Source of the DNA: Octopus bimaculoides
Taxonomy: Eukaryota
Assembly (NCBI RefSeq): GCF_001194135.2
Contig: NC_068986.1
Coordinates: 51,588,753 to 51,652,752 of the forward strand
Length of the DNA stretch: 64,000 bases
Direction: 5' to 3'
This document shows positions 25,745-25,787 of the stretch, in pieces. Within the stretch, counting starts at the first letter, position 1, and each line of letters begins with the position of its first letter. Below the pieces are notes generated by a model. The model worked only from the letters and a program-made list of their open reading frames with translations, did not search any database and was not told the origin of the DNA. The position numbers were made by a program, and so were the translations under genes.

Positions 25745-25787
25745 CAACAATAAATTCAGATACTCACCTGGAAAAGAAGAAAAGAAA
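25745..25787 (-). promoter_or_regulatory. Candidate recursive splice site (ratchet point) with 23-nt cryptic RS-exon
   Basis: Minus strand: TTTCTTTTCTTCTTTTC-CAG|GTGAGTATCTGAATTTATTGTTG|GTGAGA. The acceptor at 25768/25767 is immediately followed by a consensus donor, and a second donor lies 23 nt downstream. Confidence 0.6.

What the first reader, a model, noticed from the sequence alone, without database searches (positions are those of the whole stretch)
25745..25787. Textbook recursive-splicing ratchet point with a cryptic 23-nt RS-exon in a probable cephalopod long intron
Seen: in unique sequence the minus strand reads a 17-nt pure pyrimidine tract + CAG directly followed by GTGAGTA, a perfect acceptor butted onto a perfect donor. 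A second donor (TTG|GTGAGA) lies 23 nt downstream. Established: AG|GT ratchet points subdivide very long introns in Drosophila (e.g. Ubx) and vertebrate neuronal genes, and they are defined through a short cryptic exon with a downstream 5' splice site. Inference: the window lies in a long minus-strand intron removed stepwise. The 23-nt exon is frameshifting and has TGA in phase 0, so inclusion would be a poison event. I know of no description of recursive splicing in cephalopods, but cannot check the literature here.
Basis: partly seen in the sequence, partly recalled or inferred. Interest (0 to 1): 0.7.

Follow-up and report, generated by a model that had tools for sequence, protein, structure and literature searches.

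The report
Candidate recursive splice site, unverified
The minus strand really does carry a near-perfect intron-end signal butted against a near-perfect intron-start signal, the signature of stepwise ("recursive") removal of very long introns, but with no RNA data, gene annotation or related genomes to hand it stays a good candidate rather than a demonstrated site.

Summary
The minus strand at 25787-25739 reads TTTCTTTTCTTCTTTTCCAG|GTGAGTATCTGAATTTATTGTTG|GTGAGA, with the AG|GT junction at 25768/25767. It is the only YAG|GTRAGT in the window and the clear outlier among 351 scored AGGT sites. The sequence is single-copy within the window.

Chance expectation is about 0.003 per window for a pyrimidine run of at least 12, and about 0.00016 for a run of at least 18, as seen here. 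That scales to roughly 6-116 chance sites in a 2.5 Gb genome.

It meets the sequence-level criteria of fly ratchet points. These are TT at -5/-6, adenines at -21 to -33, and a weaker second donor less than 100 nt downstream.

The defining criteria could not be tested: position in a long sense-strand intron, junction or lariat reads, and conservation. No coding exon was detected on either strand. Indirect hints favour a minus-strand transcription unit (T>A on the minus strand in all eight bins; CpG o/e 0.21 throughout).

The 23-nt "RS-exon" is shorter than the roughly 50 nt reported for flies. No canonical branch site is present.

My estimate is about 0.42 that the site is used recursively and about 0.40 that it is an inert coincidence. 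The cephalopod origin is unverified.

The parts
25770..25787 (-). Polypyrimidine tract: an uninterrupted 18-nt pyrimidine run (TTTCTTTTCTTCTTTTCC) with TT at -5/-6
   Evidence: It is the longest Y-run-plus-AG in the window on either strand. TT at -5/-6 is found in 99.5% of fly ratchet points (bioRxiv 10.1101/006163).
25768..25769 (-). Acceptor AG; the putative recursive junction lies between 25768 and 25767
   Evidence: No other AG occurs between -3 and -34; the nearest upstream AG is at 25803/25802.
25760..25767 (-). Ratchet-point donor GTGAGTAT, a 6/6 match to GTRAGT, preceded by CAG
   Evidence: Only 3 of 351 scored AGGT sites in the window have a 6/6 donor.
25745..25767 (-). Putative 23-nt cryptic RS-exon (GTGAGTATCTGAATTTATTGTTG). 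It shifts the frame and has TGA in two of three frames.
   Evidence: read directly. It is shorter than the ~50 nt described for fly RS-exons (PMC8605326). It lies within the '<100 nt to the next 5'ss' rule (PMC6224609).
25739..25744 (-). Downstream donor GTGAGA, preceded by TTG. By consensus match it is weaker than the ratchet-point donor.
   Evidence: It is the only reasonable donor within about 170 nt downstream. The others (GTAACT, GTATAA, GTTGAC, GTTTTT) are poor.
25788..25803 (-). Branch-point window (-21 to -36): A-rich (ATAAATTAACAAATGA read 3'->5'), with several adenines but no CTRAY/YTNAY consensus
   Evidence: read directly. Fly recursive branch points map to -36 to -21 with a peak at -30 (10.1101/006163).
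25336..26008 (.). Block that is single-copy within the window and holds the motif. It lies between a (TG)n(TA)n microsatellite (25293-25335) and a SINE-like repeat (26009-26453).

Best explanation
This is a sequence-competent recursive splice site (ratchet point) on the minus strand.

Proposed mechanism, all inferred:
1. The window lies inside a long minus-strand intron.
2. U2AF and U2 recognise the 18-nt pyrimidine tract plus CAG. They may be helped by U1 bound at the TTG|GTGAGA donor 23 nt downstream, or by intron definition.
3. The upstream exon is spliced to position 25767.
4. This recreates a strong 5' splice site, (exon)|GTGAGTAT.
5. That site out-competes the weaker +23 donor, so the next segment of the intron is removed and nothing from here reaches the mRNA.
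6. If the +23 donor were used instead, a 23-nt frameshifting insert would result.

Shown: the motif, its rarity, its single-copy status within the window, and the relative donor strengths by consensus match.

Inferred: transcription from the minus strand, intronic position, actual use by the spliceosome, and any selected function.
For: - The motif is the only one of its kind in 128 kb of strand length and a clear outlier.
- Chance expectation at the observed strength is about 1.6e-4 per window, or about 6 per 2.5 Gb.
- TT at -5/-6, as in 196 of 197 fly ratchet points.
- An AG-free zone runs from -3 to -34, with adenines at -21 to -33. Fly recursive branch points lie at -36 to -21.
- A second, weaker donor lies less than 100 nt downstream, as at most fly sites (PMC6224609). 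The ratchet-point donor being stronger than the RS-exon donor is the arrangement that gives constitutive skipping (PMC8605326).
- No coding exon was detected on either strand in 64 kb. This is compatible with a very long intron.
- Repeat-masked sequence has T>A on the minus strand by 5.3 +/- 0.6%, with the same sign in all eight 8-kb bins. From my own knowledge, that is the direction expected for the sense strand of introns.
- CpG o/e is 0.13-0.25 throughout. In octopus, methylation is confined largely to bodies of a subset of genes (PMC9476566).
- In flies, 63% of introns longer than 40 kb hold a high-confidence recursive site (PMC6110457).
Against: - There is no RNA evidence, no annotation and no conservation data.
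- Efficient recursive sites are rare in vertebrates: about 20 in mouse brain, in under 0.06% of long introns (PMC8797253), and about 10 in human. If cephalopods resemble vertebrates, chance sites (6 to ~116 per genome) equal or outnumber real ones.
- The 23-nt RS-exon is unusually short for exon definition.
- No other usable donor lies at 30-170 nt downstream.
- There is no canonical branch-site motif.
- GC skew is zero overall, so only half of the transcription-asymmetry signature is present.
- The baseline CpG o/e of the source genome is unknown to me.
- Single-copy status was tested only within the window.
Confidence: 0.42

Rival explanations
1. An inert coincidence. One of the many pyrimidine-rich low-complexity tracts of this AT-rich genome happens to end in CAG and abut GTGAGT. 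The DNA here is either not transcribed from the minus strand or is ignored by the spliceosome. There is no function.
For: - Pyrimidine runs of at least 10 followed by AG are common: 12 in the window, 6 of them at least 12 long.
- TC and CTT-type simple repeats occur elsewhere in the window.
- Extrapolation gives 6 to ~116 chance composites per 2.5 Gb.
- The scan examined many windows for many kinds of motif.
- No host-gene exon was found. No RNA family or tRNA gives any strand information.
- Most of an octopus genome is intergenic.
- The 23-nt spacing to the second donor and the missing branch consensus look unselected.
- A GTRAG donor-like motif falls within 100 nt by chance about 14% of the time (195 per 128 kb).
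Against: - The per-window probability is 1.6e-4 to 3e-3.
- The site is far ahead of every other AGGT in the window.
- The strand of the motif agrees with the strand favoured by the T>A asymmetry.
- Uniform strong CpG depletion hints at a methylated gene body.
Confidence: 0.4
2. An ordinary, non-recursive splice signal. It would be the 3' splice site of an unannotated alternative, poison, UTR or lncRNA exon that starts at 25767 (the 23-nt microexon or a longer terminal exon). Alternatively it would be the 5' splice site of a short exon ending in ...TTCCAG.
For: - The acceptor and donor are each individually excellent.
- One frame of the 23-mer is open.
- Mouse 'RS-like cryptic exons' and thousands of annotated exons begin with GT (PMC8797253; PMC6224609).
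- A possible acceptor (…TGTATTCAG|) lies 34 nt upstream of the donor.
Against: - No protein in a 5.8-billion-sequence database matches any unique ORF of at least 30 aa on either strand.
- A 23-nt exon would shift the frame and has stops in 2 of 3 frames.
- An exon made of a pure pyrimidine tract is implausible.
- A strong donor at exon position +1 would normally cause the exon to be skipped recursively.
Confidence: 0.1
3. The motif is carried by an old dispersed repeat or transposon fragment that is present in many copies elsewhere in the genome. Its apparent rarity would then be an artefact of looking at one window.
For: - At least 18.5% of the window is repeated within the window itself.
- A SINE-like element abuts the block 240 nt upstream.
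- Genome-wide copy number could not be checked.
Against: - There is no second copy or even weak similarity in 64 kb.
- There was no exact 25-mer match in 241 million JGI metagenome records, although cephalopod DNA is hardly expected there.
- No Pfam or Rfam signal lies in the block.
Confidence: 0.08

Closest known systems
Drosophila intronic ratchet points (zero-nucleotide recursive splice sites; Ubx, kuz, Bx, luna; Duff et al., Pai et al., Joseph & Lai)
   Same: - A long pyrimidine tract plus CAG directly joined to GTRAGT.
- TT at -5/-6.
- A-rich region at -21 to -36.
- A second, weaker 5' splice site less than 100 nt downstream.
- An out-of-frame cryptic exon.
- Setting in exon-free DNA of tens of kilobases.
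   Different: - The RS-exon would be 23 nt rather than about 50 nt.
- The donor is GTGAGT rather than the commoner GTAAGT.
- Host intron, usage and conservation are all unknown.
- The organism is not an insect, and recursive splicing is undescribed in its presumed clade.
Vertebrate recursive splice sites defined through RS-exons (CADM2, HS6ST3, LSAMP and others; Sibley et al. 2015, and PMC8797253 for mouse)
   Same: - An AGGT core enriched for the U1-complementary AGGTRAGT.
- A pyrimidine-rich 20 nt upstream.
- A downstream 5' splice site.
- Poison-exon potential if the downstream donor wins.
   Different: Vertebrate sites sit in first or second introns longer than 51 kb, in genes longer than ~294 kb. 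They are highly conserved and very few in number (about 10-20). None of this can be checked here. A 23-nt RS-exon would be atypical for exon definition.
Pseudo (decoy) splice sites in non-coding DNA
   Same: An isolated consensus-like signal with no exon, no coding potential and no supporting transcript evidence.
   Different: Decoys are usually single acceptor-like or donor-like motifs of moderate strength. A near-perfect acceptor fused to a perfect donor is expected only about 6 times per 2.5 Gb at this strength.

Membership tests
Recursive splice site / ratchet point (fly type) | [quoted passage not shown] | tested here: met
   An 18-nt Y-run plus AG|GTGAGT. It is the only YAGGTRAGT in the window and has the top composite score of 351 AGGT sites.
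Recursive splice site / ratchet point (fly type) | TT at positions -5 and -6 (99.5% of fly ratchet points) | tested here: met
   -8 to -1 reads TTTTCCAG, so -5 and -6 are both T. The criterion comes from 10.1101/006163.
Recursive splice site / ratchet point (fly type) | Location inside a long intron (over ~11 kb in flies, over 51 kb in mouse), on the sense strand | tested here: inconclusive
   No exon was found on either strand in 64 kb. The T>A asymmetry and CpG depletion are compatible with a minus-strand transcription unit. No annotation or RNA data was available.
Recursive splice site / ratchet point (fly type) | Downstream 5' splice site that defines a cryptic RS-exon (less than 100 nt away, ~50 nt typical) and is weaker than the ratchet-point donor | tested here: inconclusive
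   TTG|GTGAGA at +23 is within 100 nt and is weaker by consensus match. But 23 nt is well below the typical ~50 nt, and no alternative donor lies at 30-170 nt.
Recursive splice site / ratchet point (fly type) | Branch point about 21-36 nt upstream | tested here: inconclusive
   Adenines are present at -21, -23 to -25, -28, -29 and -31 to -33. No YTNAY or CTRAY match was found.
Recursive splice site / ratchet point (fly type) | Splice-junction reads from the upstream exon to the site, a saw-tooth nascent-RNA profile, and lariats to and from the site | not testable with these tools
   No RNA-seq data is accessible.
Recursive splice site / ratchet point (fly type) | Strong evolutionary conservation of the AG|GT core relative to its flanks | not testable with these tools
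   No related genome is reachable. Window ORFs are not on record. The nearest reverse-transcriptase relatives are only 60-74% identical and come from unnamed ENA assemblies. The metagenome scan was empty.
   32% GC, abundant (TA)n and (TG)n, and a ~430-nt tRNA-headed SINE that I recall as octopus-like. That recollection is memory, not a test. No tool returned an organism name.

The most novel reading that the evidence does not exclude
A constitutively used, conserved ratchet point in a giant intron of a cephalopod gene. It would be the first recursive splice site outside insects and vertebrates. It would work through an unusually short 23-nt RS microexon, or by intron definition. That would imply that fly-style recursive splicing is ancestral to bilaterians, or was recruited independently to handle the very long introns of cephalopods.
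Probability: 0.2. Interest if true: 0.55.

Novelty: new member of a known kind. Interest (0 to 1): 0.35.

Why it matters
Recursive splicing has been shown experimentally only in Drosophila and vertebrates. The two differ about 20-fold in how often they use it (197 or more sites against about 10-20).

A verified site in a lophotrochozoan with a large, intron-rich genome and a complex nervous system would address two questions. One is whether the mechanism is ancestral. The other is whether its frequency tracks intron length or lineage.

This single locus cannot answer either question. It does supply a concrete junction (25768|25767), a lariat start (GTGAGTATC) and a motif definition for a genome-wide census.

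Tried and rejected
1. Finding the host gene.
- Pfam on concatenated minus-strand ORFs from 64000 down to about 29500 returned only transposon domains.
- The search for homologous proteins was run on all unique ORFs of at least 30 aa: minus strand 2,853 aa and plus strand 3,754 aa. Neither gave a hit.
- A reverse-transcriptase fragment used as a positive control gave 338 hits, so the search itself works.
- Caveats: exons in ORFs shorter than 30 aa, UTR or non-coding exons, and ORFs removed by my composition and repeat filters would be missed. The source species' proteome may not be in the database.

2. Locating the source contig or orthologues through exact-protein look-ups. Window ORFs are not on record. 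The reverse-transcriptase relatives sit on unnamed ENA contigs that are only 68-72% identical at the DNA level, one with 48% GC, so they are not close relatives.

3. Strand clues from non-coding RNAs. Rfam gave no match at gathering threshold and there are no tRNAs.

4. Strand counts of GTRAGT, Y-tract acceptors and AATAAA. The splice-like motifs are symmetric between strands. The AATAAA imbalance (119 against 84) is what the A/T skew alone predicts, so it adds nothing.

6. An exact 25-mer scan of JGI metagenomes found nothing.

7. A full-text search for a SINE fragment, to name the taxon, found nothing.

8. SINE copy alignment to calibrate CpG decay. Mixed CG/TG/CA columns show decay, but there is no outside baseline, so I did not use it.

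9. Rejected: reading the CACCTG on the plus strand as an E-box. Any CAGGTG contains one, and 6-mers are uninformative.

Full report
**What is there**

Read on the minus strand, 25787-25739 is TTTCTTTTCTTCTTTTCCAG|GTGAGTATCTGAATTTATTGTTG|GTGAGA. Its parts are:
- an uninterrupted 18-nt pyrimidine run at 25787-25770;
- the acceptor AG at 25769-25768;
- the first donor, GTGAGTAT, at 25767-25760;
- a 23-nt interval at 25767-25745;
- the second donor, GTGAGA, at 25744-25739.

That includes the TGA in phase 0. There is also a TGA in phase 1, and the third frame is open.

**Is it more than chance?**

The window has 352 AGGT on the two strands, but only this one matches YAG|GTRAGT. I scored 351 of them by pyrimidines in the 20 nt upstream of the AG plus matches to GTRAGT. 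This site has 19/20 and 6/6, for a score of 33. The next best scores 28.

Pyrimidine runs that end in AG fall off about 0.61-fold per added base. There are 131 runs of at least 6, 12 of at least 10 and 6 of at least 12. P(GTRAGT | AG) is about 4.9e-4.

| Pyrimidine run | Expected per window | Expected per 2.5 Gb |
|---|---|---|
| at least 12 | 0.003 | about 116 |
| at least 15 | 0.0007 | about 27 |
| at least 18 (as observed) | 0.00016 | about 6 |

These figures come, and one search agrees. Order-3 and order-5 Markov simulations of 20 Mb each produced no Y12 composite.

So the motif is a real statistical outlier for one window. A genome of this size is still expected to hold a handful to about a hundred such coincidences. 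These figures assume the two halves of the motif are independent and that no dispersed repeat carries it.

**Repeat status**

The motif sits in a 673-bp block (25336-26008). This block has no other copy in the window at word size 11 or 7. It is flanked by a (TG)n(TA)n microsatellite at 25293-25335 and a SINE-like element at 26009-26453. Genome-wide copy number could not be tested. A 25-mer scan of JGI metagenomes was empty, as expected.

**Fit to known recursive sites**

Points that fit:
- Fly ratchet points have TT at -5/-6 in 196 of 197 cases, and branch points at -36 to -21 (10.1101/006163). Here -5 and -6 are TT.
- The stretch from -3 to -34 has no AG, and adenines lie at -21 to -33.
- Most fly sites are followed by another 5' splice site less than 100 nt downstream (PMC6224609).
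- The RS-exon is constitutively skipped when the ratchet-point donor is the stronger one (PMC8605326). Here GTGAGT after CAG beats GTGAGA after TTG by consensus match.

Points that do not fit well:
- No YTNAY or CTRAY branch consensus is present.
- The fly RS-exon is described as about 50 nt, and Ubx m1 and m2 are 51 nt. Here it would be 23 nt.
- No other usable donor lies between 30 and 170 nt downstream.
- From my own knowledge, internal exons under about 50 nt are poorly recognised by exon definition unless helped. A 23-nt RS-exon is therefore a weak point, unless the acceptor is recognised by intron definition.

**Gene context**

This is the crux, and it could not be settled.
- Pfam on minus-strand ORFs from 64000 to about 29500 found only Transposase_1 and Exo_endo_phos.
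- Searches of all unique ORFs of at least 30 aa against 5.8 billion proteins gave no hit. The minus-strand query was 2,853 aa and the plus-strand query was 3,754 aa.
- A reverse-transcriptase fragment used as a positive control gave 338 hits.
- Rfam and tRNA scans were empty.

So 64 kb shows no detectable coding exon on either strand. That fits either a very long intron or an intergenic desert.

Two indirect signals lean towards a minus-strand transcription unit.
- In repeat- and microsatellite-masked sequence, (A-T)/(A+T) on the plus strand is +0.053 +/- 0.006, and it is positive in all eight 8-kb bins. T therefore exceeds A on the minus strand. From my own knowledge, that is the direction typical of the sense strand of introns. 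GC skew is zero overall, so the signature is only half present.
- CpG o/e is 0.21 overall and 0.13-0.25 in every bin, with GpC o/e near 1.1 and no CpG island. In O. bimaculoides fewer than 10% of CpGs are methylated. Those that are cluster in the bodies of a subset of genes, while intergenic DNA and transposons are largely unmethylated (PMC9476566). If the window is octopus DNA, such depletion suggests a germline-methylated gene body. I do not know the genome-wide baseline, so this is a hint and not a test.

Counts of splice-like motifs and AATAAA by strand add nothing beyond base composition.

**Base rates**

- In flies, 197 to about 540 recursive sites are known, and 63% of introns longer than 40 kb hold a high-confidence one.
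- In mouse brain only about 20 sites were found, in under 0.06% of long introns. About 10 efficient sites are quoted for human.
- If cephalopods resemble flies, real sites at this motif strength would far outnumber the roughly 6-30 chance ones, and the posterior probability would be high.
- If they resemble vertebrates, chance sites equal or outnumber real ones.

I weighed these scenarios together with the compositional hints (for) and the short RS-exon, the missing branch consensus and the mostly intergenic genome (against).

| Explanation | Probability |
|---|---|
| Site is used recursively | about 0.42 |
| Inert coincidence | about 0.40 |
| Conventional or cryptic exon boundary | about 0.10 |
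| Repeat-borne motif | about 0.08 |

The probability that it is a conserved, constitutive ratchet point is lower, at about 0.2.

**Taxon**

No tool named an organism. The reverse-transcriptase relatives are 60-74% identical and lie on unnamed ENA contigs. One of these has 48% GC, so they are not close relatives.

The window has 32% GC, many (TA)n and (TG)n tracts, TA-flanked assembly gaps, and a ~430-nt SINE with a tRNA-like head. I recall that SINE as typical of octopus genomes, but that is memory, a lead and not a test. A text search for a fragment of it found nothing.

**Novelty**

The searchable library holds no paper that combines recursive splicing with octopus. Only one paper combines it with 'cephalopod', and there the two terms occur in unrelated references. 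If verified, this would be a new member of a known kind of element in a new clade. It would not be a new mechanism.

**Verdict**

Interest is moderate to low until RNA or conservation data are examined.

Noticed in passing
window 1-64000: CpG depletion is uniform and vertebrate-like. CpG o/e is 0.21 overall and 0.13-0.25 in every 8-kb bin, with GpC o/e about 1.1. There is no CpG island, and the maximum GC in any 500 bp is 0.45. For an invertebrate with mosaic methylation this would point to a germline-methylated domain such as a gene body.
   Followed up: partly
window 1-64000, repeat-masked: There is a consistent strand asymmetry. A exceeds T on the plus strand by 5.3 +/- 0.6%, with the same sign in all eight bins and the strongest signal at 40-56 kb (0.085-0.11). 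GC skew changes sign along the window, from -0.08 at 1-16 kb to +0.04 to +0.06 at 32-48 kb.
   Followed up: partly
26009-26453, 47398-47804, 27977-28348, 60197-60626, 6418-6819, 32478-32710 (partial): A SINE-like family of about 430 nt. It has a tRNA-like head (…GGTTCNGGTTCAGTCC…), a conserved core (TGGCACCTTGGGCAAGTGTCTTCTACTATAGCC…GGAAACTGAAAGAAGCC), an internal (TG)n/(TA)n microsatellite and an A-rich tail (…CAAGTAAAAGAATAAAAGAATA). Copies lie in both orientations. CG/TG/CA mixtures at several columns indicate CpG decay. ARAGORN does not call the heads as tRNAs.
   Followed up: partly
192-512 (-), 13591-13887 (-), ~52665-53016 (-): Broken Tc1/mariner transposase fragments: HTH_Tnp_Tc3_2 (E = 9e-14), the Mos1 HTH_48 domain (E = 6e-15) and Transposase_1 (E = 2e-9). 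All are interrupted by stops or frameshifts.
   Followed up: yes
40804-41217 (-) and 63701-64000 (+): LINE remnants. One is an endonuclease/exonuclease/phosphatase domain (E = 5e-7). The other is an RVT_1 reverse-transcriptase fragment that runs off the window end (E = 8e-9). The closest database relatives of the latter are 60-74% identical and lie on megabase ENA contigs.
   Followed up: yes
2562-2941, 5206-6164, 20357-20601, 21700-21709, 23942-24382, 37180-37593, 63522-63531: Seven assembly gaps (2,459 N in total). Several are bordered by (TA)n, which suggests a short-read scaffold broken at AT microsatellites. The nearest gap is about 1.4 kb from the motif.
   Followed up: no
12149-12448 (-): A 100-aa ATG ORF (MSLFSIEKYCNSTT…CSLCIRESLEIL…) with no Pfam match. 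It lies within a self-repeated, transposon-rich stretch, so it may belong to an unclassified mobile element.
   Followed up: partly
18246 (+) and 44794 (+): The only other AG|GTRAGT sites in the window are AAAG|GTAAGT and TTAAG|GTGAGT. Neither has a comparable pyrimidine tract (14/20 or fewer), so they look like ordinary donor-like decoys.
   Followed up: yes
14698-14812; 30922-31208; 10767-11090: Minisatellite-like tandem arrays: 38 nt x 3 copies, 28 nt x 10 copies (an ATAC-based unit), and 36 nt x 9 copies embedded in (AT)n.
   Followed up: no
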